From positions 124,001-188,000 of IMG/VR virus record IMGVR_UViG_3300018891_000001: DNA of 64,000 nucleotides; one strand, 5' to 3'. The number at the start of each line of letters is the position of its first letter. Position 1 is the first letter of the stretch. The notes under the pieces were generated by a model. It was not told the origin of the DNA. It saw nothing but the letters and a program-made list of their open reading frames with translations, and ran no database searches. This document shows, piece after piece, positions 15,857 to 51,824 of the stretch. Both the position numbers and the translations under genes were made by a program.

Positions 15857-16627
15857 ATGAGTTACATTCATGCGCACGATCGTTACGTCATAGAATTTCA
15901 AAAAACAGGAGACTCTAGTAAACTCATTCTTCAATACAAAAATTTTCTTAATAAATATGCCACTTTGTTGTATCATGATTTGATTGATTTTCGAAACCAT
16001 GATATCCGTTGTTTCTTAGCTTGCTATATTTCCGATAAAGAAATCAATCAAAATCTTCGTAGAGGGAAATATCATTCTTCCGAGGCAATGGCTTCTGCGT
16101 ATCGTGCATTACAATACTTGCGTTCAAAATTACGAAACCATACTTATCAAGAAATAGAGCACGAATTATTAATTCCATTTCTTCGATGTGCTCAAATTTA
16201 TGAACCTAAAGGAAAAGGGTTTCAAAGCTATTTGTATAAAACTTACCGCTACGCCCTAAAACGACACTTGGATCGTATTCCAGTTGATATGTTGGATTAT
16301 CATCGATGGGTGTATCAAAATTTGTGGGTGGAAGAAGAGGAAAAAGAAGAAGAACTTCCTAGCGAACTTATCATCGAAATGGATCAATTTTTTGAATTAA
16401 GTGATCCTCGTTGGATTCATGGCAAAAGGGCAGGGGAACCCTTTAACCATCTGAAACCTCATGAACGTTACATACTAGTAAAATACTATTATGAAGGGTA
16501 CACCGATAAAGAAATTGCAAGAATGCTCCCCTACCACCCAAAATCTATTCATCGAATTCGTATGCGACTAATAAAATATTTTAAGCAGTTGTATGAGAAA
16601 GGGGAACTCAAATGTCTCAGGCTCTAA
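15857..16627 (+). CDS. Divergent sigma70-family RNA polymerase sigma factor
   Basis: Region-2-like LILQYKNFL and FQSYLYKTYRY; region 4 LKPHERYILVKYYYEGYTDKEIARML. Confidence 0.75.
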   Translation: MSYIHAHDRYVIEFQKTGDSSKLILQYKNFLNKYATLLYHDLIDFRNHDIRCFLACYISDKEINQNLRRGKYHSSEAMASAYRALQYLRSKLRNHTYQEIEHELLIPFLRCAQIYEPKGKGFQSYLYKTYRYALKRHLDRIPVDMLDYHRWVYQNLWVEEEEKEEELPSELIIEMDQFFELSDPRWIHGKRAGEPFNHLKPHERYILVKYYYEGYTDKEIARMLPYHPKSIHRIRMRLIKYFKQLYEKGELKCLRL

Positions 16628-18199: not shown

Positions 18200-19690
18200 A
18201 TGTGCCAAGGCATACACGTTCATGTACATAGTGAAGAAAGTTTGCTTGACGGATTATCAACTGTCAAACAGCTTGTTGCTAAAGCCAAAGCACTTGGACA
18301 TATTGCTTTAGGGCTTACCGATCATGGTGTGTGTGGAGCTATACCGGATTTTATTTCTGAGTGTCAGAAACAGGGTATTAAACCTATTCCGGGATGCGAG
18401 GTATACATGACCAAAAATCGTTTAATCAAAGGAAAAGAACTAGAAGAAATGCGTATCAAACTTTGCACCAAATACAAAATTACAGATCATAAAGGCAAGC
18501 CTAAGATGAAATTACTCCAAGATTTTCTTCGAAAAGTAGAAAAGAATTATGCTTGCTTTGAAGAAGAGGCTCGCATCCTATTAAAAGACTATCTCATGTC
18601 AAGTGACCCTGAACCCAAGGAGGAGTCACTTGATTTATTTTCCATCTATGAAATAGATTTTAATGAACCTCTAGAAGCGAAAAAAGCTCCCGATACTGTT
18701 GAAGAAAAAATAGAAGCTTTTAAAAAAGAAGTGTTTCACTACCTTGACTATGGTAATTTTCACATGGTGTTACTTGCCATGAATAATCAAGGACTGGAGG
18801 ATTTATATGAGATTGTTTCTGATGCTCATATTAATGGCTTCTATTCTGATCCTCGTACCGACCTTGATTTTATTCGAGAAAGAGGTCTGGGCAGGAATCT
18901 TATTGCTACTTCAGCCTGTCTTGGGAGTTATTTTAGTCAGCTCTGTTTGGCAGGAAGAATTGAAGAAGCGAAACAACATATTTTAGAATGCAAAGAAACC
19001 TTTGCACATTTTTATTTAGAAAAACAGGCTACCTCTATCCCCGAACAACTTTATATTAACCAAATCATTGATCAATTAGCCGTTGAAACCAATACACCGA
19101 AAATTCTCACCACAGACGTACACTATGCCAATAAAGAAGACAATCACATTCATGATATCCTTGTTACATCTTCTATTGGTAAGTGTATCTCTGATGAAAA
19201 CCGTATGAAATACGCCCATGAATTCTGGATGAAAAATGACGAAGAAATGATGGAAAAATGTTACGATCCAGAAGCATGGGGGAATACACTAAAAATTGCT
19301 GAAATGGTCAATGTTTCCTTACCGAAGGAGCCATTATTTCCAAAATTCTTGATTGAAGGAAATGAAACGGCTGATGAACTATTGAGAAAGAAAGCATGGA
19401 ACGGTTTATTCGAAATGGCATTAACCGAAGATATTGATATTCAAGAATACTCTCGAAGACTCCAATATGAACTGGATGTTATTTGTACAGAAGGATTTTC
19501 AGATTATTTCTTGATTACCGAAGATAAAATGAGAGCCACAAATGAAGCCGGCTTTTTAACAGGTCCGGGGCGTGGTTCGGGTGCAGGCTCACTCGTATGT
19601 CGATGCCTCAAAATTACTGCACTGGATCCGATTAAAGAAAACCTACTATTTGAGCGTTTCCTAAATCCAGAACGTGCTGGATATCCTGAT
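18200..19690 (+). CDS. dnaE: DNA polymerase III alpha, exon 1 (PHP domain and start of polymerase domain)
   Basis: HVHSEESLLDG, TDHG, SACLGS, GPGRGSGAGSLV, FERFLNPERAGYPD; the join 18200-19690 + 21004-21683 + 23092-24451 is 3531 nt and in frame. Confidence 0.9.
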
Positions 19691-21003
19691 TGGCTAACAA
19701 AATTTGTAGCGTAATGCATTTCATTTTCCTATCAATAATGATACAATAGATATAGATTATTGATAGGAGGAAGCAATAATGGGGAAACTTTATACGTATG
19801 ATATTATCTGTGAAACATGTGGAGAAACTGTAACTGTTACACGTTCAAGAAAAAATTCGAGATATTGCTCTAAATCGTGTGCATCCAAAGCGCCTCGAAA
19901 ATACAAAAACATCAACGAACAAGAAATTATTGATATGTATCAAAACGGATTATCCTTACAAAAGATTGAACAACAAACAAGCATCAAGATAGAGAAAATA
20001 AGAAAGATCATTCATCAAATAGGAATTATGAGAAGCAATAAAGAAAACTCTCGCAAATATCATATTAATCATGATTATTTTGAAACGATTGATACTGAAC
20101 ACAAAGCATATTGGCTTGGATTTATATATGCTGATGGATATATTGCAAAAAGAAAGGGTAATCAAAAATGCATCGGTATTGCATTATCAAGAAAAGATGA
20201 AGATCATATAAAAAATTTCTTGTTCGACGTTGATTCTAATTATGTAATTAGACAGTATACAGGAACAACTCCAGATGGAAAAGATTTTGAATATTCAAGA
20301 GTGATTATTACATCTGATAAAATGTTCGATGATTTATTGAATAAAGGAGTTGTCGAACACAAAACATTGGTTCTTCAATTTCCTTCATTCGAAATTGTCC
20401 CAAAAACTTTAATGCATCATTTTATCAGAGGATACTTTGATGGTGATGGATCATTCTCAAAATGCATAGAAGGATATACTCTTCCATATAAAGTGAGAAT
20501 CTGTGGAACAAAAGAGTTTCTTCAAGGCATTGAGAATTTTATTGGAATCAAAGGGAATTACAGTAAACGTCATAAAGATGATAAGAATAATTGGACATTA
20601 GAATACTCCAATAAAGAAGATATCCTTCAATTTGCTAATACCATTTACGAATATTGCACAATCTGCTTAAACAGAAAATATCAACGCTACAAAGAAATGT
20701 TGGATCAGTCGTCCTAATAAGAAACTATTAGGATTATCACTCGGTGAATTGCTGGAAACTCCTTAGAGCCTTATACACCACAACGTAGTTGGAAACGACA
20801 AGCGTGATGGTTTGAAAAGTATAAGGATTGGACAATCAGCAGCCAAGCTCCTAAGTCACAAGATATGGAGAAGGTTCAACGACCATCCCGTGGGAGGGAG
20901 TAGGGCAAATGCCCGAAGTGCCGAGCACCCAAACCGTTAAGGTCGGTGGGTGAAGATATGGTCTATTCCCTATACAAATATGTCGAAAGACAGGGTATCA
21001 AAG
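19691..21003 (+). mobile_element. Group I intron 1 in dnaE, HEG in P1 loop
   Basis: Core motifs gaattgctggaaac, aatcagcagccaag, gttcaacgacca, aagatatggtcta; ends in G; removal restores PD|LDIDY; the U.G register at the 5' site is not clean, so the boundary may be off by 1. Confidence 0.85.
19779..20717 (+). CDS. Intron-encoded LAGLIDADG homing endonuclease with N-terminal Zn finger and HTH
   Basis: YWLGFIYADG and FIRGYFDGDG; CETCG...YCSKSC. Confidence 0.9.
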   Translation: MGKLYTYDIICETCGETVTVTRSRKNSRYCSKSCASKAPRKYKNINEQEIIDMYQNGLSLQKIEQQTSIKIEKIRKIIHQIGIMRSNKENSRKYHINHDYFETIDTEHKAYWLGFIYADGYIAKRKGNQKCIGIALSRKDEDHIKNFLFDVDSNYVIRQYTGTTPDGKDFEYSRVIITSDKMFDDLLNKGVVEHKTLVLQFPSFEIVPKTLMHHFIRGYFDGDGSFSKCIEGYTLPYKVRICGTKEFLQGIENFIGIKGNYSKRHKDDKNNWTLEYSNKEDILQFANTIYEYCTICLNRKYQRYKEMLDQSS

Positions 21004-23091: not shown

Positions 23092-24451
23092 CGGTAGACC
23101 AGGACCTTTAGATCTAATTCCTACATATGTTGCTCGCAAATGGGGAAGAGAAAAAGTCACTTATCCATTTCTAGAGTTAGCACCAGTACTTGAAGAAACA
23201 TATGGAGTTTGGGTATATCAGGAGCAGCTTATGAGAGCTTCACAGATTTTAGGTGGACTGACACTAGGACAAGCTGACATGATTCGTAAGGGAGTTGCTA
23301 AGAAAAAATTTGATTTAATGAACCGATGGATTGATCTCATGATTTACGGCAGCGAGGAGTATAAACGTCGTCATGCTCAATTAGTCAATCAATATCCGTT
23401 AGATGCGGAAGGAAAATCCACCGTACCACTTAACGAAGAAGGAAAACCTGCCTTATGGGTCGATTATGAGTACGAGCAAGTTCCTGATGTAGAAGGGGCC
23501 ATTGCTCGTGGATTTGATGAACCAACCTTGCTCAAAATTAAAGCCGACTGGATTAAGTTCGGTAATTACTGTTTCAATAAAGCCCACTCAGCGGCATATG
23601 CCTTTTTATCATGCATTACCGCATGGTTAAAATGCTACTATCCTGTTGAATTTATGGCTGCTTTATTAACCATGGCAGAAGGAAAGAAAGATAAAAACGG
23701 AAATCCAAAAACCATTCACTACATGAAAGAATGTGAAGAAATGGGAATCCGTATTTTGTCTCCTGATATTAATCAATCCATGTCTGGCTGGACTCCAATT
23801 TCCTATAATGAGATCCAATACGATAATCAGAATCGACCATGTATCGGTGAAATTCGCTATGGTCTAGCAAGTATTGGCGGTGTAAGTGAAGAATCTGTTG
23901 TAGAAATTATTTTGCGTCGTTCGTATTCTTCCTTAGAAGATTTTATTGCCAAAGTCAACAGCACAAAAGTGAATAAAACCAAAGTAATAGCCTTAATTAA
24001 AGCGGGTTGTTTTGATTCCTTCACTCCTAATCGTAATCTTCTTCTTCGTAACTATTATCGATCCCGTGGTGAAGAGTATGAGCATATCCCAACAACTACA
24101 AACAAAGCTACTATTCTTTCTTACGAGCGAGAAGTTTTCGGGACAGCCATTAGTATTCGTTCTCGATGGGAAAAAATCGAAGAAGGAGCTCAAACTCAAC
24201 TCACCGGTCATATTAATGAAATCGAATCCTGGAGAGCGAAAACAGGAAAAACCCATTTTACATTGGTGGTTGAAACACAGGAAGAACCAATCTTCGTTAC
24301 GGTATGGGGTTATTTAATGGAAAAATATAAAAATGAACTTCAAATTGGAAACAAAGTCACCATTAAAGGGGAAAAATCGAAAAACAAGCTGATTGCAAAA
24401 ACCGTCCAACAACACGCCAATATGTATGAAGTAGATTTGCCTTCAGCATAG
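23092..24451 (+). CDS. dnaE: DNA polymerase III alpha, exon 3
   Basis: GRPGP, YGVWVYQEQLM, YCFNKAHSAAY, YYPVEFMAALL, OB fold at the C-terminus. Confidence 0.9.
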
Positions 24452-31673: not shown

Positions 31674-31790
31674 ATGGAAGTATTATTAGTGGCTGGAACC
31701 ATTATGATTATGACCAACACTATGGTGCTGTTAATGTTAGCACCTACTATTTTAAAAGAGGTGAAGCATGGTGCCACTCGGAAATTTTAA
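31674..31790 (+). CDS. Small hydrophobic peptide
   Basis: RBS ggagg; MEVLLVAGTIMIMTNTMVLLML. Confidence 0.5.
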   Translation: MEVLLVAGTIMIMTNTMVLLMLAPTILKEVKHGATRKF

Positions 31791-34074
31791 ACGACTCTTT
31801 CAACCTAGTTTAATTCAAAACGAAAAAGACGTATCTTATCATTTGCCTTCTTTATCACGAGCAGAAGCAAAAGCCCTTCTCTCCGCTCCCTTAGCGGGGG
31901 GAGGGGTCTTTGGCCTAGAAGCCCACCAAACAAAAGACCATGAAAGTCTTATTTTTTTTGCTCCGCCTTACTATAAAGTGGAATGGAACCTCGCAGACCG
32001 AGACGCTGTTTTTGAAAATCTTGAAACCTATAAAAAACAAATCACCATCATGCAACTATATACGAGTAAATCCTCATTGTTTCCTCTCTCCATTGAATAT
32101 ACTCAGTCTTTTTGGGAACAGGTTCGGCAATTTGCAGCTGATGATATCGGAATTATTTATCAAATTGTACTTGCATACCGACAAGACCGATGGAAAGAAC
32201 GAATCAAGGAGCAATATCAACTGTATCTAAGTGGAATCCAATCTCCCGCTGATCAAAAATGGGTACGCAGTATTCAAAATCGAATTAATCACTCCTTAGA
32301 TCATCTCTTGCAATGGGAGTTCAAATATGCCCCTATTCCTGAAGTGGAACAGAAACTAAAAGAAAATGGATTTCGATATAGTATTCGGCTCATTCTTTAT
32401 GGCGGTAATCGAGCGAGGCGAAGAAAACTAATACATGAAATACAACAAATTTTACGAACCATGGAGTATATCAATGAATGGAAAGTGAATACCTTTTTTG
32501 CGTTTGACGATATTATTCAGAATATCCAAAAACGCAAGCTCGATAATGTAGGAAAGCAACAAGTCTTATGTGTATCCGAATTGCTGCCATTTCTGATGTC
32601 CGAACATGTAGTGTACATTGAAAAACCGGCCATAAAAAAGGTAACAAAAACAAAGGTAAAAAATCCATTCGATCTCCTGCCGATAGGCAAGAAAATTCAA
32701 CAAGTCGATGGGAGTCAAATAGCTCAAAAATTTGTTTACGCTCTCCAAGAGTTAAAGGTAATTAAAGAAGAAATTGTTGCTAAACGAGTTCAATGTGGGC
32801 CAATCATGATGAAAATCACCTTTGATTTACCGAAGGGGATGCGTCTTTCGGATATAACAAAGAAAAATATGATTGAGGATATTCAGACTCATATGGGAGT
32901 CAAACATCTACAGATCTTACAAGGGGAGGATACGGGAGAATTCGATATTATGTTGCCACAAGAAAAAAGGCAAAAAATCTTTTTACGAGATTATGTGGAT
33001 ACCTCTGAATTTATGGAGTTTGCCGGACAACATCCACTTCCATTCTTTGTAGGGGTGGACGAAATAGGACGCTCCATTTTTCGTTGTCTAAGTGAAATTC
33101 GTCATATTCTTGTAGCAGGAACAACCGGATCCGGCAAAAGCGTGTGGATGAATCAACTTATTCTTACCTTGTTATTAATTCGCAAACCCGATGAACTTCA
33201 ATTTTATATGATTGATCTAAAACAAGTGGAACTCACCTGCTTTCAAGATTTCCCTCATGTGCGAGAAGTCATCACAGATGCGAACAAAGCTATTCACCTA
33301 CTTAGGAAAATCCAAAAAGAGATGGACAGACGTTATCAATTATTTAGTGAAACAGGAGTAAAAAACATTGCCTTGTATAATAGAAAACATCCTCATCAAA
33401 AGCTCCCTTATATTGTGTGCATTATTGATGAATATGCGGAATTAGCATTACGAACGGATAGTATACATGAACTCGTTCAAAGTATGGCACAACTCGCAAG
33501 GGCTGCTGGCATCCACTTGATTATTGCAACCCAAGATCCACGAGTTGAAGTAATCCCAGGAATTATTAAGTCCAACATGCCGGGGAAAATCGGTTTCCGT
33601 TGCTCTAATGGAAACAGTTATCTAACATTTTTAAATACGAAACCACCTTTTAACCTATTAGGAAACGGGGATGGGGTCATGAGCTTTGAGGGGCAAATAG
33701 AGGAGCATATTCGCTTTCAGGGATGTCTGATTATCGATGATCCCAAAAACGAAGGGCTTGAAAGTCAGTTGATTGCACAAATCGCAAGTCATATGGACGA
33801 CTATGAAGGAGTAGATTTACCAGAATTAGAGGAAACAGAAGAAGTGCATATAGAAGAAACAGAGACAGAAATAGACCGACTTAAACGCATTATTGCTCAA
33901 ACAGGGGAAACAAGGGTATCACAACTAAGGGAAATGATGAAAATTAACATCAATCGATTGAATGATTTGATGAGGGAACTCGCAGAAGAAGGGTGGCTGC
34001 AAAAGCCAGAATCCAAACAGCAAGGATACCAATTAATTGCACCAGAAGAGGAATTGGAAAAGTGGAGACAATAA
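31768..34074 (+). CDS. FtsK/SpoIIIE-family DNA translocase
   Basis: HILVAGTTGSGKS, IDLKQVEL, IIDEYAE, ARAAGIHLIIATQ, LLGNGDG; C-terminal winged helix. Confidence 0.9.
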   Translation: MVPLGNFKRLFQPSLIQNEKDVSYHLPSLSRAEAKALLSAPLAGGGVFGLEAHQTKDHESLIFFAPPYYKVEWNLADRDAVFENLETYKKQITIMQLYTSKSSLFPLSIEYTQSFWEQVRQFAADDIGIIYQIVLAYRQDRWKERIKEQYQLYLSGIQSPADQKWVRSIQNRINHSLDHLLQWEFKYAPIPEVEQKLKENGFRYSIRLILYGGNRARRRKLIHEIQQILRTMEYINEWKVNTFFAFDDIIQNIQKRKLDNVGKQQVLCVSELLPFLMSEHVVYIEKPAIKKVTKTKVKNPFDLLPIGKKIQQVDGSQIAQKFVYALQELKVIKEEIVAKRVQCGPIMMKITFDLPKGMRLSDITKKNMIEDIQTHMGVKHLQILQGEDTGEFDIMLPQEKRQKIFLRDYVDTSEFMEFAGQHPLPFFVGVDEIGRSIFRCLSEIRHILVAGTTGSGKSVWMNQLILTLLLIRKPDELQFYMIDLKQVELTCFQDFPHVREVITDANKAIHLLRKIQKEMDRRYQLFSETGVKNIALYNRKHPHQKLPYIVCIIDEYAELALRTDSIHELVQSMAQLARAAGIHLIIATQDPRVEVIPGIIKSNMPGKIGFRCSNGNSYLTFLNTKPPFNLLGNGDGVMSFEGQIEEHIRFQGCLIIDDPKNEGLESQLIAQIASHMDDYEGVDLPELEETEEVHIEETETEIDRLKRIIAQTGETRVSQLREMMKININRLNDLMRELAEEGWLQKPESKQQGYQLIAPEEELEKWRQ

Positions 34075-37354: not shown

Positions 37355-37558
37355 TTAATTAGCTTTCACCAATTCATACTCATCTTTATTTAATACTATG
37401 TCACCGCCAAATGATTCTTCATAAACCGTAACCGATTGATCTTCTTTATCATAGTATTTTACTTCATAGATCTTTCCGATTAAATGTTCAATCGACAATT
37501 GTGCGACAGCAATACGTTGTGTGTCAGGTTTACTTGCGATGACTCTAACCTTCATCAT
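37355..37558 (-). CDS. Hypothetical protein
   Basis: RBS ggag; overlaps the doc stop. Confidence 0.6.
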   Translation of the reverse strand: MMKVRVIASKPDTQRIAVAQLSIEHLIGKIYEVKYYDKEDQSVTVYEESFGGDIVLNKDEYELVKAN

Positions 37559-38145
37559 TTTACTCCTTTATCCTTTTTGTATCCTTTTTGCATATCGTCC
37601 AATAATTTTTGGAGTTCTTTTCGTTCTTCCATTTCTTTTTCTGTTAAAATTTCCTGAATCTCTAATTCATTTAACAAGTCTATGTATTCTTTATACAATG
37701 GTATCAAGGTTTCCTTGCTTGGTTCCATTCCTTCTATATATTGAGATTCAGGAACGCTGTTTCTTTCTAACCAATCAGCCAATTTTTCCAGACTCCACTT
37801 TTTATTTGCAACCAATTTTGAAACAAAGTATAATTCCCAATCTGATATTACGACCACATATCCGTTAAATTCCAAAAAAGTGGCTGCAGTAATATATGCT
37901 GTACGTTTGTTTCCATCCACAAAGTACTGACTTGTGGCTAGAGTATGCATATATACTGCAGCTTTGGTAAATAAACCTGGATATGGTTCATACGTATGCC
38001 CACCAAAATCATAAGTTTGAAACGGTTTATATGCCAGACTATCAATAAGACCTGGTTCATACTCACCAGGCAACCCACCAAACTCTTGTAGAGCCATGTC
38101 ATGAAACATTCGAATATGTTTGGGCTCTAAAGATTCAATGTTCAA
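37555..38145 (-). CDS. doc: Doc/Fic-family toxin (His-to-Gln motif variant)
   Basis: EFGGLPG, LFTKAAVY, SQYFVDGNKRTA. Confidence 0.85.
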   Translation of the reverse strand: MNIESLEPKHIRMFHDMALQEFGGLPGEYEPGLIDSLAYKPFQTYDFGGHTYEPYPGLFTKAAVYMHTLATSQYFVDGNKRTAYITAATFLEFNGYVVVISDWELYFVSKLVANKKWSLEKLADWLERNSVPESQYIEGMEPSKETLIPLYKEYIDLLNELEIQEILTEKEMEERKELQKLLDDMQKGYKKDKGVK

Positions 38146-40908: not shown

Positions 40909-41116
40909 AAACAGACATCACGTTTTTAATATCGTCTGTTTCATCGGTAACAAATGCTAGGATCCGATGCAATTTCGGATCTTCTGCAAAAACCGGCTCA
41001 ACAAATACAAAATAAAACGAATGTTGCACATATACCGATAAATTATATTGTGTCGTATCTATATCCCGAAATAACGATACACTTCGAAACAAGTCATAGC
41101 TTTGTATAAGCTCCAT
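40862..41116 (-). CDS. Hypothetical protein (MELIQSYD...)
   Basis: RBS aggtgag. Confidence 0.6.
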   Translation of the reverse strand: MELIQSYDLFRSVSLFRDIDTTQYNLSVYVQHSFYFVFVEPVFAEDPKLHRILAFVTDETDDIKNVMSVFEFANSKGAVSIEFL

Positions 41117-41124
41117 AGACTCAC

Positions 41125-41280
41125 CTATTCTTCAATCTCCGCATAATCTTCAATGCTTCGATCATACCAAGTATGTTCAGAAGGATCCATCTCTTGTAAT
41201 TTGGCTTTTGCTTCTTCAAGATTAGAAGCTTCAATGACTTGTTCTGATACAGCTGTCAAAGAAAAAACATAAAGCGGCAT
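41125..41280 (-). CDS. Small hypothetical protein (51 aa, not in ORF track)
   Basis: RBS aaggaggg; V.A.NLEEAK motif. Confidence 0.55.
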   Translation of the reverse strand: MPLYVFSLTAVSEQVIEASNLEEAKAKLQEMDPSEHTWYDRSIEDYAEIEE

Positions 41281-41337
41281 GAATCTCCCTCCTTTATCGT
41301 CTTTTCACAAAATTCATGCATGATCTTGTGTGTATGA

Positions 41338-41484
41338 TTAATTCACTTCCCGCCATACAGGGGAATATCCATCATCCGCTAATGCTTGCATTTTCGTGTT
41401 TCTCTCTGCTTCGGTTTCTGCATAATCCACTTGTTCTTCTCCCATTTCGTTTAACCAAATGATTTTGTATTGGTATTCAGCCAT
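41338..41484 (-). CDS. Small hypothetical protein (48 aa, not in ORF track)
   Basis: RBS aggaggg. Confidence 0.55.
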   Translation of the reverse strand: MAEYQYKIIWLNEMGEEQVDYAETEAERNTKMQALADDGYSPVWREVN

Positions 41485-41534
41485 TGTTTGCCCTCCTAAC
41501 CATAGATAAATTTTTTATTTTTTATGAAAATCGT

Positions 41535-41936
41535 TTATAAAAAATCAGATTGACGCAAGCCATGATACCCCAATGGATTTCGTTCATAAGAGCGTCTGTC
41601 TTTGGCATGTTCGATAATTTCTTGAAACAAGTTTCGCCATTGTGAGGAAAACCAATTGACTCGATCATACAATAAGCTAAACAATGCTTCATGTACATCG
41701 GTTCGTGTTCCATATTCTTGTGCTAAAATATCATAGTATTCAACTTCTTCTTGCGTCATATAGACTGCATATAACGTGTCTACCACTTTTCTCATCGTAT
41801 CCATATCATCAATAGGATTCCATGGCTCTCCATGTTCATCAATATAACGGTCCAATTGATTGGATGCTTCTTCGTAGAACAATTCCTCAAACTGAGTTTG
41901 ATATGTGTTTGCCAATTGTTCTAATAGTGAAGTCAT
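41535..41936 (-). CDS. Hypothetical protein
   Basis: RBS ggagg before ATG 41936. Confidence 0.6.
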   Translation of the reverse strand: MTSLLEQLANTYQTQFEELFYEEASNQLDRYIDEHGEPWNPIDDMDTMRKVVDTLYAVYMTQEEVEYYDILAQEYGTRTDVHEALFSLLYDRVNWFSSQWRNLFQEIIEHAKDRRSYERNPLGYHGLRQSDFL

Positions 41937-42178
41937 GCTGTTGCATCCTCCAACCATTTTGAATAAATAACAGCGTCACCTTTCCAATATTGATACCCTC
42001 GACCAAAAGAGCGTTCTTGGATTACATCCAGATCATCTGGATATTCATAAGTTTTAAAATTTTTCTTTTCATGTTGCATATAGTAAGCAATTAAAGCCTG
42101 TTTCGGTTCTAATGTATATCGGGCCAATTCGTGAAATTCTCCATCTTCATCAAGCATCATAACCACAGAGACTGCCAT
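41933..42178 (-). CDS. Hypothetical protein
   Basis: RBS aaggagg. Confidence 0.65.
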   Translation of the reverse strand: MAVSVVMMLDEDGEFHELARYTLEPKQALIAYYMQHEKKNFKTYEYPDDLDVIQERSFGRGYQYWKGDAVIYSKWLEDATA

Positions 42179-42199
42179 TCTTTTTCCTCCTTATACTCG

Positions 42200-42229
42200 G
42201 TATAATTTTGTTTTACTTAGGGAAAAGTA
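42200..42229 (+). promoter_or_regulatory. Forespore sigmaF-like promoter
   Basis: GTATA-15-GGGAAAAGTA, matching GYATA-N15-GGnnAnAnTA. Confidence 0.65.
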
Positions 42230-42263
42230 AAACCAATCCTTATATATAAAGGTGGTGAAAGAA

Positions 42264-42449
42264 ATGTCACGCAATACAAATCAAATTCTCGTACCTACAG
42301 CTCAACAAGCATTAGAGCAAATGAAGTATGAAATTGCTCAAGAGTTTGGTGTTCAACTTGGAGCAGATGTCACTTCTCGCATCAATGGTTCTGTCGGCGG
42401 CGAAATCACTAAGCGTTTGGTGGCTTTAGCGCAAAGTCAATTGCGCTAA
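42264..42449 (+). CDS. ssp: Alpha/beta-type small acid-soluble spore protein
   Basis: [49 protein letters not shown]. Confidence 0.95.
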
Positions 42450-42455
42450 CATAGC

Positions 42456-42477
42456 AAAAGCCACTTAGGTGGCTTTT
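42456..42477 (+). terminator. Hairpin or terminator after ssp
   Basis: aaaagccac-ttag-gtggctttt. Confidence 0.7.
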
Positions 42478-42479
42478 GG

Positions 42480-42842
42480 ATGGTGATTCCATTCAACAAG
42501 AAAGCACATCTTACTATTGGAATTAGTATCGGAATATTGCTTGCATTGGTGTTCGAACATATTTTTCTTCATGATGTGTTTTACATCATCATAGGGTCTT
42601 TACTCCCTGATATTGATCATCCACGTTCAACATTTGGAAAATACAATCCATTTGTTCGTTTTATGAAACATCGTGGAAAATCACATACCATTGTAGGTAG
42701 CCTTCTCCTGTCTTTGCCTATGGTTATTATAGGGGTAGACCCTTTTGTTTTTACCTTTTTAGGATGTTTGATTCACATTTTGTCTGATAAATGCTACTCA
42801 TTTCTACCAGGAAAGCGCAAGTTTTCTATTCGATTTTGGTAG
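42480..42842 (+). CDS. YdjM-like membrane metal-dependent hydrolase
   Basis: GSLLPDIDHP, HRGKSHT, HILSD. Confidence 0.85.
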   Translation: MVIPFNKKAHLTIGISIGILLALVFEHIFLHDVFYIIIGSLLPDIDHPRSTFGKYNPFVRFMKHRGKSHTIVGSLLLSLPMVIIGVDPFVFTFLGCLIHILSDKCYSFLPGKRKFSIRFW

Positions 42843-42845
42843 AAG

Positions 42846-43010
42846 TTACTTATAGCAAATTTCCCGTAAATCTTTTAAAGCTTCAACCAATCCCGGCAGT
42901 TTCTTAGCGTTACTGTCATCAGGATGTTTCGTTAAGTAATTGATTTTAGCTTGCAAAAGAGCGTGCAATTCTTCAATTTGCGAACGCTCTTTGCTTGTGT
43001 TTATTTCCAT
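42846..43010 (-). CDS. Small hypothetical protein (54 aa, not in ORF track)
   Basis: Open frame directly following the 43013 stop. Confidence 0.5.
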   Translation of the reverse strand: MEINTSKERSQIEELHALLQAKINYLTKHPDDSNAKKLPGLVEALKDLREICYK

Positions 43011-43012
43011 TT

Positions 43013-43252
43013 TCAAACACTTTTCTTGATAATATCTTCGCTAAGAAACTTTAAGACTACAGGATTCTTCTGTTTTTTCAGCCATCGAATATAAGCGACA
43101 TTATCTGCTCCATAAGTCCCGCTTCGCTGACTAAATGGCACCTCTTGTTCAAATTGCTTCCACAAACGAAGATGTTCTTCCGGATATGCTGCTGCAAAAG
43201 TATTAGTAATAAAAATGGAACTTGCAATTGTATCAAGACTCATATTACGCAC
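43013..43252 (-). CDS. Hypothetical protein
   Basis: Overlapping operonic start. Confidence 0.6.
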   Translation of the reverse strand: MRNMSLDTIASSIFITNTFAAAYPEEHLRLWKQFEQEVPFSQRSGTYGADNVAYIRWLKKQKNPVVLKFLSEDIIKKSV

Positions 43253-43698
43253 TCCTCAAATAAATTCATTTGGTTTTGATCAGAAATTCCCCAATAGTTC
43301 ATAACAATCCCATCTTTTACGGCATATTCTTTCTCATCAACTACATATATACCGTCTGGAAATAAGACAAATTCGTCATCCATATTTCTAAATTGAATCA
43401 AATCTCCAATTGCGGCACCCTTTAACATAGAGAGGCCTATCTGCCCATCTTCAGTTTGCATAAGCTGACCTAATGGTGTTAATTTTCGAAACGAAGTGAC
43501 AACTGTTTTCTCCACAACGATTTCCAATTGAAACTGCATACGACAAGAAGGACATGCATACAGTTCTTCATCCGATAACTCATGGTCATATGATTCCCAT
43601 AACCGTTCTGCTAGTCGATCTTCTAATCCTACATAAAACGAATCTCCACAAGAGCAAAAAATATGACCATTAGAATATTGAATGCTCACAATCTTCAT
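43240..43698 (-). CDS. Hypothetical Zn-ribbon protein
   Basis: CSCG...CPSC; RBS aaggag. Confidence 0.65.
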   Translation of the reverse strand: MKIVSIQYSNGHIFCSCGDSFYVGLEDRLAERLWESYDHELSDEELYACPSCRMQFQLEIVVEKTVVTSFRKLTPLGQLMQTEDGQIGLSMLKGAAIGDLIQFRNMDDEFVLFPDGIYVVDEKEYAVKDGIVMNYWGISDQNQMNLFEECVI

Positions 43699-43738
43699 CT
43701 CCTTTTTTAAAGGGTGTGTAATGCATTACACACTTGGT

Positions 43739-45067
43739 TTATTCGACTTCTTGAAAATCGGATTCAAACGGATTAAACTCAAATTCTGGAATGCCTTGGA
43801 AATCTTCAATTTCCACTGGCGCATTATAATTAATTTGAACGCTTCGTACTGGAACATAAAGCTGCACACAATCTGGGTTTCCATTATTTAGTAAGCCTTT
43901 AAATGGTTGAATACCTGACGGTTTATTTGGCGCAGACGGCAAAAACTCAAAACGAATATAATCGTCATTGTTGTAGCGAGAAAGAGCTTCTTGTAAATAA
44001 CGAACATTGACCGCTACAATCACATCAGCCCCTTTTCCTTCCGTAGTAGAAATATCTTGCTGGAATGAACCAACTTCTTGTTCACGAGTATTGACTCGCA
44101 TTTGATTAAGTTCTGGTTTGATACGAATAATAATCGGCTCATCCGTATTATAAACCGTAGAGTTATTGAGCAATTCCTTAAATGAACCAGCATGAATTAC
44201 TACTGAACTTGCAGATTGTGATGAGTCAAAAATCAAACGATCTGTATCTGGATAATTTCCTTCTAATAATCGAGCATATAATGTAACATCTTCAAACTCA
44301 TAAACCACTTGAGTTGGATAAAAGTGAAGAATGACTTCTACTTCAGTTGCATCTAAGTGTTTTTTCACTTCTTGTAATACCGCTGCTGGCACAGTCATTT
44401 CCACATTTGTATGTTCTTCATCCAATTCGTAAACGTACTGACTTAATCGATGAGAGTCAGTGGCAACACATTTAATAACACTGCCAGAAATCTTATGAAA
44501 GACTCCTGTTAAAATCGGGCGTGTTTCTTTAGTGGATACCGCATAAACCGTATGATCATAAATACGACTTAATACATCTGGATGAATAGAAACAGAAGTA
44601 ATCTTTTCACCTAAATCCGGTGTACGTGGAAATTCATGTCCATCTAATCCGTGTAAATCAAAAGTTGGGCGACCCGATTTGATAACAGCCACTTTATCAT
44701 GAATACGTATCTCAGTATTTTTGTGATTCAGTTTCTTGACAATTTGAATAAATTTATCGCCCGGAAAACAAATGGAACCCGGCTTTCCTTCTGTAATTTT
44801 AAAATTCGTTCCTTCTTTATTTTGAGTTGCTACAGCTTCTGTTAAGTAATCGTTATTAATGCCACGGAAAATCAAACGATCTTCTTGAATTTCCATGTAA
44901 ATGAATTTATAAATTTCCTGTACGGCCTTTTTCGCTACAGAACGTTCTACTTTGCTTACCAGTTTCTTGAGCAAATCTGTTTGAATTGCTAATGCCACAT
45001 GAGTTTTTAATTCCTCTTCAATTTCTTGATCAATTTTTTCTACATCAATACCTTGTAATTCTAACAT
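43739..45067 (-). CDS. dnaN: DNA polymerase III beta sliding clamp with N-terminal extension
   Basis: AVSTKETRPILTGV, VATDSHRLS, RLLEGNYPD, VNVRYLQEAL. Confidence 0.9.
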   Translation of the reverse strand: MLELQGIDVEKIDQEIEEELKTHVALAIQTDLLKKLVSKVERSVAKKAVQEIYKFIYMEIQEDRLIFRGINNDYLTEAVATQNKEGTNFKITEGKPGSICFPGDKFIQIVKKLNHKNTEIRIHDKVAVIKSGRPTFDLHGLDGHEFPRTPDLGEKITSVSIHPDVLSRIYDHTVYAVSTKETRPILTGVFHKISGSVIKCVATDSHRLSQYVYELDEEHTNVEMTVPAAVLQEVKKHLDATEVEVILHFYPTQVVYEFEDVTLYARLLEGNYPDTDRLIFDSSQSASSVVIHAGSFKELLNNSTVYNTDEPIIIRIKPELNQMRVNTREQEVGSFQQDISTTEGKGADVIVAVNVRYLQEALSRYNNDDYIRFEFLPSAPNKPSGIQPFKGLLNNGNPDCVQLYVPVRSVQINYNAPVEIEDFQGIPEFEFNPFESDFQEVE

Positions 45068-45824: not shown

Positions 45825-46394
45825 TTATATCCCTCCCGTAAGCTCTTGAATCCGGCTAGTTGCATAATAATAAAGAGAACGAGCTTCATCAATATCTTTA
45901 GCCAACCACAATTTTTCTTCCATTTCTTCTTTTAGCTGTTTTAGTTCATTTTTTATCTCATCAATATTTAAAATTCGGGATTTAATGTATTCATCAGCCG
46001 GTGAACCTTCAGATATTCTCTGATATTGAAAAATTCGGGATTTAATGTATTCATCAGCCGGTGAACCTTCAGATATTCTCTGATATTGAAAAGTATCTTC
46101 ACAGCCTCTAAAGAGTTTAGAAATAGCGATTTTATGAGGTTCTTTTTGATTTTCAAGATGTCTGATTTGTTTTTCTAATTCCCTGATTTGTTGGTCAATA
46201 TCTTTAATGGCATTAAAATGAGGCTGCAAATTATTTTGAACAATAAACTCTTGTTTGAGCTCTTCCTTTCGCTGTGCTAATACATCTCGTCGGTCATAGA
46301 GAATATCATTGATTTTACCCTCAATCATATCAATCAGTTTCTCAATACGTTTTGCATCTAATCCTCGGTCATGACGAATAATTTGTGTAGTCAT
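45825..46394 (-). CDS. Hypothetical coiled-coil protein with a 20-aa internal duplication
   Basis: FQYQRISEGSPADEYIKSRI twice. Confidence 0.7.
   Translation of the reverse strand: MTTQIIRHDRGLDAKRIEKLIDMIEGKINDILYDRRDVLAQRKEELKQEFIVQNNLQPHFNAIKDIDQQIRELEKQIRHLENQKEPHKIAISKLFRGCEDTFQYQRISEGSPADEYIKSRIFQYQRISEGSPADEYIKSRILNIDEIKNELKQLKEEMEEKLWLAKDIDEARSLYYYATSRIQELTGGI
45970..46092. repeat. Perfect 60-bp tandem duplication
   Basis: 45970-46029 is identical to 46030-46089. Confidence 0.95.
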
Positions 46395-46396
46395 GA

Positions 46397-46642
46397 TTAT
46401 CCCTCCCAATGTCCATGACGTTTTAATATTTCAATGACTTCATTGATATAAGGCTCATCCATGTTAATTACAATATAGCTATTCAGTTTTTTTCCTTCTT
46501 CTATGCGACCTTTGTTGATTTCCTCGCATAAATCACGTAAATACATCTTCTGTGTTTCCCAACCGTATTTCTCTACATCTTCTGTTTTTAATACAATGTA
46601 TTTTGGGTGTTGTTTGATTTCTTGAATGGTTGAATCAATCAT
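46397..46642 (-). CDS. Hypothetical phage protein
   Basis: KYIVLKTEDV...YIVINMDEPY...V.EILK. Confidence 0.65.
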   Translation of the reverse strand: MIDSTIQEIKQHPKYIVLKTEDVEKYGWETQKMYLRDLCEEINKGRIEEGKKLNSYIVINMDEPYINEVIEILKRHGHWEG

Positions 46643-49753: not shown

Positions 49754-50849
49754 CGATACCTTCTAGGTCGGGAATTTAACCCAACCACTCCCCTTTCGGA
49801 GAGGACGAGACTATATCATCACTCAGGCTCGGAGACAGCCTTCATCGTGTCGGGCGCTCGTGTCGGGTTTATTGGTCGGCATCCTCACCCGTTAGTCGTT
49901 GAACCTTCCTAGCTACTCAAGTGCCATTCGCTAGGCTTGGCTGCTGATTGCCATATCCTTTCGGACTTAGGTTTCCAGCAATTCACCCGATTTTACATGG
50001 GCTACAGGATAATGTTTTCGTTCCAGATAAATCGTTGCATTGTTGTAGAGGAAATTTACAAATTTCGCATACAATCCATTTCCACCGAATCGATAACCAA
50101 ATGCTCTTCCATTCTCTTTGTATTTTTCTCTTAGTGGCAATCCGTGTTCATGTAGAACTTTGGAATAAGCATCTAGGAATTCTTTTGTACCAATCACTTC
50201 TATATTCACTTGAGGTCTGGAATTATCTCTCGGATCATAGAAGTAATGAATGCTTCCATCTCCATCGAAATATCCTCTCATAAAATGATGCAATAAATGA
50301 TGTGGCACTTGCTCTTCTGTTGGGAATTGCAAGGTCAATGATTTGGCAGGCGTACAGCCTTTATCAATTAAATCCTGTACAATTTCCATCGATACGAGTT
50401 GTAATCGATAGCATAGATGACCATTCACGTTTCTTGGTTTGATGTCCATTTCAGGAGAGATAAAATCTCGAAATCGCTCAAGATGATTAACATCTTTTTC
50501 AGATAAGCTTAGTTCCAATGTTCCCCGTGGTTCATAAACTGAGCCATCGGCATATAAGAAGCCTAACCAATATGCTTTTTCCTCGGTATCGATTACTTTA
50601 AACGCATCGGTGTTGTGATTGTATTTACTTCTTCCTGTTGTCATCCCTCTGGATTTTATCTGTATCCCATCTGCTTTTAACATTTGGGATAATTTCTTGC
50701 GGTCAAAACCTGTGAGCTCTGAAATCTTTCTCAACGATTTACCTTCCAAAAACATTTGCTTTGCCATTTCATACATGTTATCACTCCCATAGGTATATTT
50801 CCTATACCCATAATAACATGCTATGAAATGCATTACGACCTGTTTGTTA
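49754..50849 (-). mobile_element. Group I intron 3, splitting the SF2 helicase Walker A, HEG in P1 loop
   Basis: P1 atgggt/gcccat with U.G; P10 cctgt/acagg; gaattgctggaaac, aatcagcagccaag, gttcaacgacta, gatatagtct; removal restores GEMG|TGKT. Confidence 0.92.
49967..50776 (-). CDS. Intron-encoded LAGLIDADG homing endonuclease
   Basis: YWLGFLYADG, FMRGYFDGDG; start ATG 50776 with RBS gggagtg. Confidence 0.9.
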   Translation of the reverse strand: MYEMAKQMFLEGKSLRKISELTGFDRKKLSQMLKADGIQIKSRGMTTGRSKYNHNTDAFKVIDTEEKAYWLGFLYADGSVYEPRGTLELSLSEKDVNHLERFRDFISPEMDIKPRNVNGHLCYRLQLVSMEIVQDLIDKGCTPAKSLTLQFPTEEQVPHHLLHHFMRGYFDGDGSIHYFYDPRDNSRPQVNIEVIGTKEFLDAYSKVLHEHGLPLREKYKENGRAFGYRFGGNGLYAKFVNFLYNNATIYLERKHYPVAHVKSGELLET

Positions 50850-51824
50850 ACCCATTTCTCCAACGATAAAACAAAAATCATCTTCCACCAATGTTTTAGA
50901 AACACCCATAACAGTATTGGCTTGCGGTGGATATAGACCTGTAATTCCTTGCTGATTGGCACATAAATTCACATCACGAAAAGCGGGATGATGTCGTTCT
51001 TTCTCCGGATCAAAACGAACAGCAATATTCTCTTGGATACGTTTTCCTAGCTCTGGTGCAAAGTGAGTTAAATAATCATCAATCGTCTGACAATGAGGTA
51101 ATATGGATTGACTTTCATCTCGGCCATCTTCTTCAATTGCAAAGTTTAACTCATATCCTTGAACTCCTTCTGAGATAATGTTTTCTAGCTGTTCTTCTGT
51201 AATCATAAGAAGTCCTGCTTCTAGAGAATAATTGGAACCAAAACACTTCACGGTAAGAGGTGTATAATAACCTTCCTCTTCTAGTCGTTCGACAATATAA
51301 TCAGTCCATTCCTCTAGCATTGGTGTATTATATCGGTCATTCAGAACATGAAACACTTGTTTTTTGTAATTACCATCCCATGCCAAAATGAGTTCAGCTA
51401 AATGGCTTGGAATAGATTCTGGATCTAGACCTTGATTGATTCGTTCTCTTTGTTCTGCTAACCATTGATTACGTGCTTTTAAATCTGGTTTTGCATTTTT
51501 GGCCACCATCAAAATATGAGTTAAATCATCAACTTTTAATACCTCTTCATCATACGGCTTTTTAGACGTAGGAATAGCAAAAACACTATGACGAATAAAT
51601 CCTGTTTCGTATCGATTTCCTTCAGCACGATAAATTTGTCCCGTTTTTCCATCTTGCATAAGCCATGCGGCTTGCTTTACTTTGGAATCCACACCAATCA
51701 AATTGGCTAAATAGATGACATTATCGCTATCTGTCACAAGTAGATCACAATAGGCTATGCCGCTTGAAGAATGACGGTTATACATTTCTAATGTATATAT
51801 TTCCGGCATATAAAGGCGTGGCAT
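50850..51824 (-). CDS. SF2 helicase, exon 1
   Basis: RBS gaggtg; ends LYPPQANTV...CFIVGEMG. Confidence 0.85.

What the first reader, a model, noticed from the sequence alone, without database searches (positions are those of the whole stretch)
42200..42842. Forespore-expressed cassette: sigmaF-like promoter, SASP and YdjM-like hydrolase
Seen: a plus-strand island in an otherwise minus-strand arm, with GTATA-N15-GGGAAAAGTA ahead of an intact alpha/beta SASP, a hairpin, then a membrane hydrolase. Established: alpha/beta SASPs coat and protect spore DNA and are normally transcribed by sigmaG; sigmaF acts earlier. Inference: the element expects to be in the forespore and makes SASP early, to protect or silence its own DNA or to harden the host spore.
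Basis: partly seen in the sequence, partly recalled or inferred. Interest (0 to 1): 0.65.

Follow-up and report, generated by a model that had tools for sequence, protein, structure and literature searches.

The report
Phage SASP gene with forespore promoter
A 216-kb phage of a spore-forming, Bacillus-like host carries an intact spore DNA-coating protein gene and a small membrane hydrolase gene as one unit, behind a promoter that looks like those read only inside the developing spore. Phage-borne genes of this kind are already known (SPbeta sspC), so this is an interesting variant, not a new kind of system.

Summary
At 42200-42842 a two-gene plus-strand island sits in a long minus-strand replication arm of a complete 215,870-bp phage genome. 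It has four parts:
- a promoter-like site, GTATA-N15-GGGAAAAGTA;
- a 61-aa alpha/beta SASP (Pfam E 1e-22, all family-invariant residues kept);
- a 9-bp hairpin;
- a 120-aa short YdjM/DUF457 membrane protein.

The promoter classifies as sigmaF-type, not as the sigmaG type usual for SASP genes. A sigmaF pattern matched 26/26 spoIIR and 0/30 cellular SASP upstream regions. A sigmaG pattern matched 26/30 SASP and 0/26 spoIIR regions. The phage site fits only the sigmaF pattern.

MGE-borne SASP genes are well known: SPbeta sspC (sigmaG-driven), SPO1 gp34.25, Tsamsa-like phages and 323 plasmid records. Three details are new:
- the sigmaF-like promoter;
- the carrier, a jumbo phage with no detected integrase;
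- a recurring SASP-then-mini-YdjM pair, also found on two plasmid-like lineages.

On three plasmid-like lineages the YdjM gene has its own forespore-type promoter. Its other close relatives sit behind LexA-box-like sites.

Most likely this is a forespore-specific add-on unit, silent in lytic growth and switched on when the phage genome is trapped in a spore. Timing and benefit are untested.

The parts
42200..42229 (+). Forespore-type promoter-like site: -35 GTATA (42200-42204), 15-nt spacer, -10 GGGAAAAGTA (42220-42229). The predicted transcript start near 42236-42238 is an inference.
   Evidence: Sequence. Only match to the sigmaF consensus in the whole genome. Fits the sigmaF pattern that matched 26/26 spoIIR and 0/30 SASP controls, and does not fit the sigmaG pattern. 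Identical in four independent assemblies.
42201..42206 (+). TATAAT hexamer overlapping the -35 element; a possible weak sigmaA -10 box.
   Evidence: Sequence. No acceptable -35 and no TG extension. The sigma-70 scan lists no site here. It lacks the palindrome that follows the phage's own TATAAT promoters.
42250..42257 (+). Shine-Dalgarno AGGTGGTG of the SASP gene, 6 nt before the ATG.
   Evidence: Sequence.
42264..42449 (+). Alpha/beta-type SASP gene, 61 aa.
   Evidence: PF00269 at E 1.2e-22. 80-87% identical to cellular SASPs of Parageobacillus, Geobacillus and other Bacillaceae. Keeps all 24 invariant columns, including the EIAQEF and GGEITKRLV motifs.
42456..42477 (.). Hairpin with a 9-bp stem, a 4-nt loop and A/T tracts on both sides. 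Probably a leaky two-way terminator.
   Evidence: Fold z -4.2. The pattern scan did not list it, because the T run is absorbed into the stem.
42467..42472 (+). Shine-Dalgarno AGGTGG of the YdjM-like gene, lying in the loop and 3' arm of the hairpin, 7 nt before the ATG.
   Evidence: Sequence and fold. No promoter-like site lies between the SASP start and this gene, so co-transcription by read-through is inferred.
42480..42842 (+). Short YdjM/DUF457-family membrane protein ('mini-YdjM'), 120 aa, with four hydrophobic helices.
   Evidence: PF04307 at E 4.6e-17. Invariant DxD, HR, H and H...D residues across 9 homologs. AF2 model with pLDDT 80, all helical. Hydropathy profile.
41933..42178 (-). 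Flanking minus-strand ORF (81 aa, no family), downstream of the island in the direction of arm transcription.
42846..43016 (-). Flanking minus-strand ORF (56 aa, no family). Transcription of the arm would run antisense through the island.

Best explanation
The island is a self-contained add-on unit (a 'moron') in a large phage that has no detected integrase and probably infects a Bacillus-like spore former.

In lytic growth it stays off. It has none of the phage's own promoter signature, and it lies antisense to the surrounding replication-gene transcription.

When an infected cell sporulates and the phage genome ends up in the forespore, host forespore RNA polymerase reads the promoter at 42200-42229. 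By sequence this is sigmaF holoenzyme, possibly sigmaG as well. The main product is a canonical alpha/beta SASP, which coats DNA and adds to the protection of the trapped phage genome and the host chromosome. It may also help keep the phage genome quiet.

A fraction of transcripts reads through the hairpin and gives a low level of a small membrane-embedded YdjM-family metal-dependent hydrolase. Its biochemical role is unknown. Its regulation elsewhere (SOS boxes or forespore promoters) ties it to DNA-damage or spore physiology.

Shown: the gene identities, the motif class, the layout and the recurrence of the pair. Inferred: sigma-factor dependence, timing, read-through, silence during lytic growth and any benefit.
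For: 1. The SASP is intact and canonical.
2. The promoter class was calibrated. The sigmaF pattern matches 26/26 spoIIR and 0/30 cellular SASP upstream regions. The sigmaG pattern matches 26/30 SASP and 0/26 spoIIR regions. The phage site fits only the sigmaF pattern. It is also the only strict-consensus match in the genome.
3. [quoted passage not shown]
4. Precedent: SPbeta sspC is sigmaG-regulated (PMC8270828) and shows GTATA-N17-CATAATA.
5. The SASP gene is a lone opposite-strand gene in SPbeta, SPO1, Thrax5, Chewbecca and KoopaTroopa as well.
6. The phage's own promoters are TATAAT followed by the palindrome TGTAATGCATTACA (19 sites). None is at the island.
7. The mini-YdjM homologs on plasmid-like contigs follow a SASP gene. 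In three lineages they carry their own forespore-type promoter about 58 nt upstream.
8. A related jumbo-phage fragment (74 shared proteins, colinear) carries a different SASP at a different place, within an SPbeta-like sspC segment. This argues for repeated acquisition.
9. No integrase or serine recombinase was found, and the phage encodes an FtsK/SpoIIIE-like protein.
Against: - There are no expression data.
- The genome-wide count of consensus matches equals the chance expectation (1 against 0.73). The statistical weight therefore rests on position alone.
- The relaxed sigmaF pattern was shaped after I had seen the spoIIR sequences. The strict consensus missed all 26 spoIIR promoters.
- The controls come from a Geobacillus-type family, and the real host is unknown.
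- A perfect TATAAT overlaps the site.
- Thrax5-like phages seem to use a sigmaA-like promoter for their SASP, so phage SASPs are not all forespore-driven.
- Early SASP production could harm forespore development.
- The hairpin may terminate well enough that the YdjM-like gene is barely expressed.
Confidence: 0.6

Rival explanations
1. The same forespore unit, but read mainly or only by sigmaG. This gives ordinary late SASP timing, as for sspC. The sigmaF-like look has no functional consequence.
For: SigmaF and sigmaG consensus sequences are very similar, and some promoters serve both (PMC3789822). The -35 GTATA is the same as in SPbeta sspC. The -10 ends in TA followed by A. All other forespore-type SASP promoters examined are sigmaG-type.
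Against: The -10 lacks the CA/CAT start found in 26/30 cellular SASP promoters and has GGG in its place. It fails the sigmaG pattern and passes the sigmaF pattern.
Confidence: 0.2
2. The SASP is expressed during vegetative infection, from the TATAAT at 42201 or by a phage factor. It would act as a takeover or DNA-compaction protein that coats and shuts down host DNA.
For: A perfect TATAAT lies at 42201-42206. Many of this phage's promoters are -10-dominated. Thrax5 and Chewbecca have a sigmaA-like TTTGCA...TGATACTAT before their SASP. The phage encodes a divergent sigma-like protein at 15857-16627. That SASP made in growing cells is toxic is my background knowledge, not tested here.
Against: There is no usable -35 and no TG extension, and the sigma-70 scan lists no site. 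The palindrome that accompanies the phage's own promoters is absent. The gene is antisense to its arm. The sigma-like protein matches only generic or ECF-type models below cut-off, not the sporulation sigma models (no region 2 hit).
Confidence: 0.12
3. Sabotage of sporulation. Premature, sigmaF-timed SASP blocks forespore gene expression, so the host cannot escape into dormancy.
For: [quoted passage not shown] Early timing is what the motif suggests.
Against: A protein that protects DNA and is degraded at germination is an odd weapon. The same protein type is beneficial in SPbeta lysogens (PMC8270828). Nothing here bears on it directly.
Confidence: 0.05
4. A recently transferred passenger with no role for the phage.
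For: SASP genes are common cargo of Bacillus plasmids and phages. The SASP is closer to cellular SASPs (up to 87%) than to other phage SASPs (at most 73%).
Against: Both ORFs are intact and keep all invariant residues. The island is base-for-base identical in four assemblies from different sources. A related phage acquired a SASP independently. The gene pair recurs on other elements.
Confidence: 0.03

Closest known systems
sspC of Bacillus phage SPbeta (SPBc2) and relatives (phi3T, Goe11-14)
   Same: A phage-borne alpha/beta SASP, about 70% identical. It is a lone gene on the opposite strand to its neighbours, with its own forespore-type promoter starting with GTATA and a hairpin after the stop.
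   Different: SPbeta is temperate and integrates. Its promoter is GTATA-N17-CATAATA (sigmaG type; sigmaG dependence from PMC8270828). It has no YdjM-like partner. Here the -10 is GGGAAAAGTA with a 15-nt spacer (sigmaF type), and the phage has no detected integrase.
SASP genes of lytic Bacillus phages: SPO1 gp34.25 and relatives; Tsamsa-like Thrax5, Chewbecca and KoopaTroopa
   Same: SASP as a lone opposite-strand gene inside early or replication gene blocks of large virulent phages.
   Different: 58-67% identity. No forespore-type motif was found upstream. The Thrax5 group looks sigmaA-like and SPO1 is unclear. No YdjM-like neighbour.
Bacillus phage G (gp266, gp267, gp417 SASPs; gp570 'metal-dependent hydrolase')
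   Same: The only cultured phage in the collection with a homolog of the mini-YdjM (41% identity). It also carries SASPs and other sporulation-type genes (PMC12484599).
   Different: The two gene types are more than 100 kb apart and lie on the same strand as most of their neighbours.
Plasmid-like contigs with an actin-like partition gene, a T4SS coupling protein and a relaxase (L011-L014, L018-L019)
   Same: The same order and orientation: SASP, then a hairpin or terminator, then mini-YdjM. YdjM is about 51% identical and SASP 66-70% identical.
   Different: They are conjugative-plasmid-like, not phage. The spacer is longer (127-277 nt) and holds a conserved small hairpin. The SASP promoter in L011 is sigmaG-type. 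In L011, L020 and L026 YdjM has its own forespore-type promoter.
YdjM of E. coli and the YdjM-motif gene of S. aureus (LexA/SOS regulon)
   Same: The same Pfam family (PF04307), a predicted membrane-bound metal-dependent hydrolase of unknown function. Four close relatives of the phage protein also sit behind LexA-box-like sites (PMC11442139).
   Different: The phage protein is a short form (120 aa, profile positions 4-108 of 176). No LexA box is present. It is placed behind a SASP gene and a forespore-type promoter.
Entrapment of lytic phage genomes in spores ('virospores'; phi29 and others)
   Same: A biological setting in which a forespore-only phage gene would pay off (PMC9429907 introduction).
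   Different: Known phi29 mechanisms act through Spo0A repression and genome segregation, not through SASP. No link to this phage has been shown.

Membership tests
Alpha/beta-type SASP (PF00269) | Profile match above the curated threshold over the full domain | tested here: met
   80.1 bits against a cut-off of 22; profile positions 1-59 of 59.
Alpha/beta-type SASP (PF00269) | The two conserved blocks: the germination-protease site E-I/L-A-x-E-F/M and the DNA-binding block G-G-E/M-I/M-T-K-R | tested here: met
   YEIAQEF and GGEITKRLV are present. All 24 invariant columns of a 9-sequence alignment with SspC, SPO1, Thrax5, plasmid-like and cellular SASPs are kept. The functional meaning of the blocks comes from my knowledge of the family.
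Alpha/beta-type SASP (PF00269) | Forespore-specific, sigmaG-dependent expression | tested here: inconclusive
   A forespore-type motif is present, but of the sigmaF class. It fails the sigmaG pattern that 26/30 cellular SASP genes pass. No expression data.
Alpha/beta-type SASP (PF00269) | Binds DNA and raises UV and heat resistance | not testable with these tools
   Needs complementation of an sspA sspB strain or in vitro binding.
SigmaF-dependent promoter | -35 GywTA, 15-nt spacer, -10 GGnrAnAnTw, placed at a workable distance from the gene | tested here: met
   10 of 10 specified positions match. The -10 ends 34 nt before the ATG. 26/26 spoIIR controls pass the relaxed form and 0/30 SASP controls do. 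The consensus itself is from my memory of Wang et al. 2006. The spacing and the G feature are cited from PMC5942855 and PMC3789822.
SigmaF-dependent promoter | Transcription depends on sigmaF in vivo or in vitro | not testable with these tools
   No reads were available.
SigmaG-dependent promoter | GnATr-N17/18-CAtnnTA | tested here: not met
   The -35 fits. The -10 heptamer AAAAGTA lacks the C and the T (3 of 5).
YdjM / DUF457 (PF04307) | Profile match above the curated threshold | tested here: met
   62.5 bits against a cut-off of 29, but only profile positions 4-108 of 176, so this is a short form. The NCBIfam PRK11648 match is far below its cut-off (29 against 216).
YdjM / DUF457 (PF04307) | Conserved His/Asp residues of the presumed metal site, and membrane helices | tested here: met
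   D44, D46, H64, R65, H69, H99 and D103 are invariant in 9 homologs. Four hydrophobic helices. Metal binding and hydrolase activity are family annotations that were never tested here.
YdjM / DUF457 (PF04307) | LexA (SOS) regulation, as in E. coli and S. aureus | tested here: not met
   No LexA-box-like site lies upstream in the phage. Sites scoring at least 9/10 occur upstream of 4 close relatives, against 4 of 2347 control windows.
Intrinsic terminator | GC-rich stem-loop followed by a U run | tested here: inconclusive
   A stable 9-bp stem, but only four U, and these pair with the upstream A run. The pattern scan did not list it.

The most novel reading that the evidence does not exclude
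SASP plus mini-YdjM is a portable two-gene forespore module of mobile elements in spore formers. A DNA-coating protein works together with a membrane hydrolase taken from the SOS regulon. In this phage the module has been retimed to sigmaF, so that SASP is made early enough to silence and shield the trapped phage genome. This would be a dedicated 'go dormant with the host' switch for a non-integrating phage.
Probability: 0.15. Interest if true: 0.72.

Novelty: new variant of a known kind. Interest (0 to 1): 0.45.

Why it matters
Phages of spore formers can persist inside spores, yet few phage genes have been tied to that state. This is a SASP gene in a large phage with no detected integrase. 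It is insulated from lytic transcription and sits behind a promoter that by sequence belongs to the early forespore class. That makes it a concrete, cloneable handle on two questions: whether lytic phages invest in surviving inside spores, and whether the timing of SASP synthesis matters.

The recurring pair also gives the first contextual clue to the YdjM/DUF457 family. That family has sat in SOS regulons from E. coli to S. aureus for decades without a known function. Here it is repeatedly placed next to a DNA-protecting spore protein and under forespore promoters.

If the promoter turns out to be ordinary sigmaG-dependent and the hydrolase irrelevant, the finding reduces to one more sspC-like phage add-on gene.

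Tried and rejected
- **Nucleotide search.** Megablast of 41000-45000 against phage records found nothing.
- **Strict sigmaF regex as a classifier.** It missed all 26 spoIIR control promoters, which read GTTTA-N15-GTCCACAATG. I replaced it with a relaxed form. That form was shaped after seeing the controls, and I say so.
- **Genome-wide enrichment of forespore motifs.** None: sigmaF 1 against 0.73 expected, sigmaG 11 against 11.3.
- **A phage sigmaF/G-like factor reading the site.** There is no region 2 hit. The only sigma-like protein matches generic or ECF-type models below cut-off. No support.
- **yfhP next to sspE in B. subtilis, as a sign of a general YdjM-SASP link** (a lead from memory). 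The gamma-type SASP is far from the YdjM-family locus in 5 Bacillaceae genomes. None of the 80 more distant genomic YdjM loci has an alpha/beta SASP within 3 kb. Dropped.
- **Fold of the mini-YdjM.** Foldseek against the PDB gave nothing below E 2.4. VIA-align wide gave at best Z 7.5 on unrelated helical bundles, which is within noise for helical models. The faint HD-phosphohydrolase rows and the Atlas HD row (TM 0.46) are too weak to use.
- **Rfam on the plasmid-like spacers and on the phage locus L001.** No credible hit.
- **Plasmid collection.** The mini-YdjM has only one distant plasmid hit, in a Fusobacteria plasmid.

Full report
**What the window is.** The window is bases 124001-188000 of a 215,870-bp IMG/VR virus record rated complete. 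Its 'terminal repeat' is a 61-bp overlap, so it is a circular assembly. GC content is about 37%, there are no tRNAs in the window, and no integrase or serine recombinase was detected.

The genes around the finding are replication and early functions on the minus strand:
- a DnaN-like clamp at 43739-45067;
- an SNF2-type helicase, a DnaG-like primase, methyltransferase-like proteins, a Fic/DOC protein and a LAGLIDADG endonuclease.

The plus-strand arm holds a ribonucleotide reductase, a split DNA polymerase, an endolysin and an FtsK/SpoIIIE-like protein. The FtsK/SpoIIIE-like protein has its best matches, at about 34% identity, in Bacillus phages.

The same phage, with a base-identical island, appears in a JGI metagenome, an ENA assembly and a Logan run.

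**The observation.**
- GTATA (42200-42204), 15 nt, GGGAAAAGTA (42220-42229);
- SD AGGTGGTG, then a 61-aa ORF at 42264-42449 that is a full-length alpha/beta SASP (PF00269, E 1.2e-22);
- a hairpin at 42456-42477 (z -4.2 against shuffles);
- a 120-aa ORF at 42480-42842 that matches YdjM/DUF457 (PF04307, E 4.6e-17), but only over profile positions 4-108 of 176.

Both neighbours are on the minus strand. In a crude gene map, this is the only two-gene plus-strand block with family support in a minus-strand arm of about 77 kb.

**The SASP.** It is 80-87% identical to cellular major SASPs of Parageobacillus, Geobacillus and other Bacillaceae. It is 58-73% identical to other phage SASPs. It keeps every invariant column in an alignment with SspC, SPO1 gp34.25, Thrax5, the plasmid-like SASPs and cellular ones. 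These columns include the EIAQEF block and the GGEITKRLV block. It is the only SASP gene in this phage.

**The promoter.**
- *Chance.* The literature-style sigmaF consensus (GywTA-N15-GGnrAnAnTw, from memory of Wang et al. 2006) matches once on both strands of the genome, and that match is here. Simulated genomes give 0.73 matches. The count is unremarkable, but the placement is not: I estimate about 7e-5 for a chance match in the right 40 nt and on the right strand.
- *SigmaG-type controls.* Of 30 cellular SASP loci from 26 genomes of a Geobacillus-type family, 26 carry GnATr-N17/18-CAnnnTA and none carries the sigmaF form.
- *SigmaF-type controls.* For spoIIR, a sigmaF-dependent gene in B. 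subtilis (my knowledge), all 26 orthologs in the same genomes carry GTTTA-N15-G(T/G)nnAnAnTn and none carries the sigmaG form.
- *The phage site.* It passes the sigmaF pattern and fails the sigmaG one.
- *Caveats.* The strict consensus missed all 26 spoIIR promoters. I shaped the relaxed pattern after seeing them. The real host is unknown.
- *Literature.* The common sigmaF spacing is 15 nt (PMC5942855). [quoted passage not shown] The phage site has GGG upstream and ends in TA followed by A. Use by sigmaF, perhaps continued by sigmaG, is therefore the fair reading.

**SigmaA or phage-specific transcription.** The TATAAT at 42201 has no usable -35 and no TG extension, and the sigma-70 scan lists no site in this intergenic region. 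The phage's own recurrent promoter signature is a TATAAT followed within a few bases by the palindrome TGTAATGCATTACA. It has 19 sites genome-wide and 12 in the window against 0.55 expected. One copy lies at 43717, between the clamp gene and the next gene. None is at the island. The one sigma-like protein of the phage (15857-16627) matches only generic or ECF-type sigma models below their cut-offs, not the sporulation sigma models.

**The YdjM-like gene.** It starts 30 nt after the SASP stop. Its SD (AGGTGG, 42467-42472) lies inside the hairpin. No promoter-like site precedes it. It is therefore most likely made at a low level from transcripts that read through the hairpin; this is an inference.

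Its nine closest relatives are 36-52% identical and 79-156 aa long. They share invariant D44, D46, H64, R65, H69, H99 and D103. The AF2 model (pLDDT 80) is a four-helix membrane-type bundle with no informative match to solved structures. Atlas clusters show that such short YdjM proteins are partly viral.

**The pair recurs.**
- On Logan contigs of up to 22.6 kb, the 51%-identical homolog P0005 lies directly downstream of a 58-aa SASP. The neighbours are an actin-like partition gene, a YonK-like gene, a T4SS coupling protein and a relaxase, so the element is conjugative-plasmid-like.
- A second lineage (P0002) has the same order: actin-like gene, then SASP, then YdjM.
- A third relative (P0007) has a SASP fragment 2.7 kb away.
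- Two further plasmid-like lineages (P0003, P0004) show no SASP in the sequence available.
- None of the 80 more distant YdjM loci from genomes has a SASP within 3 kb.
- PLSDB plasmids often carry SASP genes (323 records), but none carries this mini-YdjM.
- Phage G has both gene types, far apart.

**Regulation of the relatives.** In L011, L020 and L026 the YdjM gene has its own forespore-type site about 58 nt upstream:
- GTATA-N18-CATCCTA;
- GTATG-N15-GGGCATGCTA;
- GTGTG-N15-GGGTATACTA.

In four relatives that are not plasmid-like (L021, L024, L028, L029) the gene instead follows a LexA-box-like site, CAAACTARTGTTCG. This matches 9 of 10 positions of CGAAC-N4-GTTCG. Sites that good occur in only 4 of 2347 control windows. 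This echoes the LexA control of ydjM in E. coli and of the YdjM-motif gene in S. aureus (PMC11442139). The subfamily is therefore wired either to DNA damage or to the forespore. That makes its pairing with a DNA-protecting protein look meaningful, although its chemistry is unknown.

**Other phages.** SPbeta sspC, SPO1 gp34.25, Thrax5, Chewbecca and KoopaTroopa all hold their SASP as a lone gene on the strand opposite to its neighbours. Phage G and a Ruminococcus phage do not. Promoter types differ:
- SPbeta has GTATA-N17-CATAATA, and sigmaG dependence is known (PMC8270828).
- L011 has GTATT-N17-CATAATA.
- The Thrax5 group looks sigmaA-like.
- SPO1 is unclear.

**A related phage.** A 93-kb fragment from an isolate genome (G001) shares 74 proteins with this phage at 27-90% identity, in colinear order. 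It lacks the island at the syntenic place. About 20 kb away it carries a different SASP, within a segment about 88% identical in DNA to the SPbeta yotB-sspC segment, complete with the sigmaG-type promoter. Two related jumbo phages therefore acquired SASP genes independently. This argues for selection. The SPbeta-like segment also points to a Bacillus host for the lineage.

**Verdict.** The sequence observation is confirmed, and the sigmaF-like reading is supported in silico. The broader idea, that a phage makes SASP in the forespore, is established biology for SPbeta. What is new here:
- the sigmaF-class promoter;
- the carrier, a jumbo phage with no detected integrase;
- the SASP plus mini-YdjM module shared with plasmid-like elements.

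Sigma dependence, timing, read-through and benefit remain to be tested. No sequencing reads could be consulted. Only genetic code 11 was used, and no contig looked human.

Noticed in passing
window 16901, 25128, 43717, 53882 (exact copies); 7788, 29938, 45122 and others (1-2 mismatches); 19 sites in the whole genome: The palindrome TGTAATGCATTACA lies a few bases after TATAAT boxes and 10-50 nt before start codons. There are 12 matches in the window against 0.55 expected. It is probably the phage's own promoter/operator signature or a 5' stem-loop.
   Followed up: partly
window 31768-34074 (+): A 768-aa FtsK/SpoIIIE-like DNA translocase (phrog_3551, E 9e-169). It is about 34% identical to those of many Bacillus Herelleviridae. 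It may be relevant to moving DNA into the forespore.
   Followed up: partly
window 15857-16627 (+): A divergent sigma-like protein. It has region 4 only in Pfam (23.5 bits, just under cut-off), a phrog_351 match at E 1e-9 and TIGR02937 below cut-off. It does not match the sigmaF or sigmaG models.
   Followed up: partly
L011:2355-2465, L018:2900-2980, and the equivalent stretches of L020 and L026: On the plasmid-like contigs, the mini-YdjM gene is preceded by a conserved small hairpin (ACCAnCTCC...GGAG) and then a GC-rich terminator. In L011 and L018 this lies after the SASP gene and is itself preceded by GAATR-N17/18-TATACTA. It could be a small RNA or a leader. There is no Rfam match.
   Followed up: partly
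L021, L024, L028, L029: 60-77 nt upstream of the mini-YdjM homologs: LexA-box-like sites, CAAACTARTGTTCG, just after a TTTACA...TAnnAT promoter. Sites scoring at least 9/10 occur in only 4 of 2347 control windows.
   Followed up: yes
G001 (L003, L007, L173-L177): A 93-kb fragment of a related jumbo phage in an isolate genome assembly, labelled provirus. I saw no host flank, although about 10 kb (roughly 42.4-52.7 kb of the contig) had no match to this phage's proteins. It carries a yotB-sspC segment about 88% identical in DNA to SPbeta, which suggests recombination between SPbeta-like phages and this lineage.
   Followed up: partly
window 18200-19714, 19779-20717, 23231-24451; also 49967-50962: The DNA polymerase is split into N- and C-terminal parts. 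An endonuclease gene (phrog_4645) follows the N-terminal part, and the C-terminal part lies about 2.5 kb further on. A LAGLIDADG-type ORF overlaps the start of another gene in the minus-strand arm.
   Followed up: no
window 37555-38145 (-): A Fic/DOC-family protein (PF02661, E 2e-12), preceded by a small ORF. It could be a toxin-antitoxin-like or host-modifying pair.
   Followed up: no
window 45825-46409 (-): The 194-aa ORF contains a perfect tandem duplication of a 20-residue stretch (FQYQRISEGSPADEYIKSRI twice). This implies a 60-bp tandem repeat in the DNA.
   Followed up: no
L109 and L110, about 60-100 nt upstream of the SASP genes of Thrax5 and Chewbecca: A conserved TTTGCA-N17-(TG)ATACTAT stretch. 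It looks like a sigmaA extended -10 promoter rather than a forespore one, so some phage SASPs may be made in growing cells.
   Followed up: no
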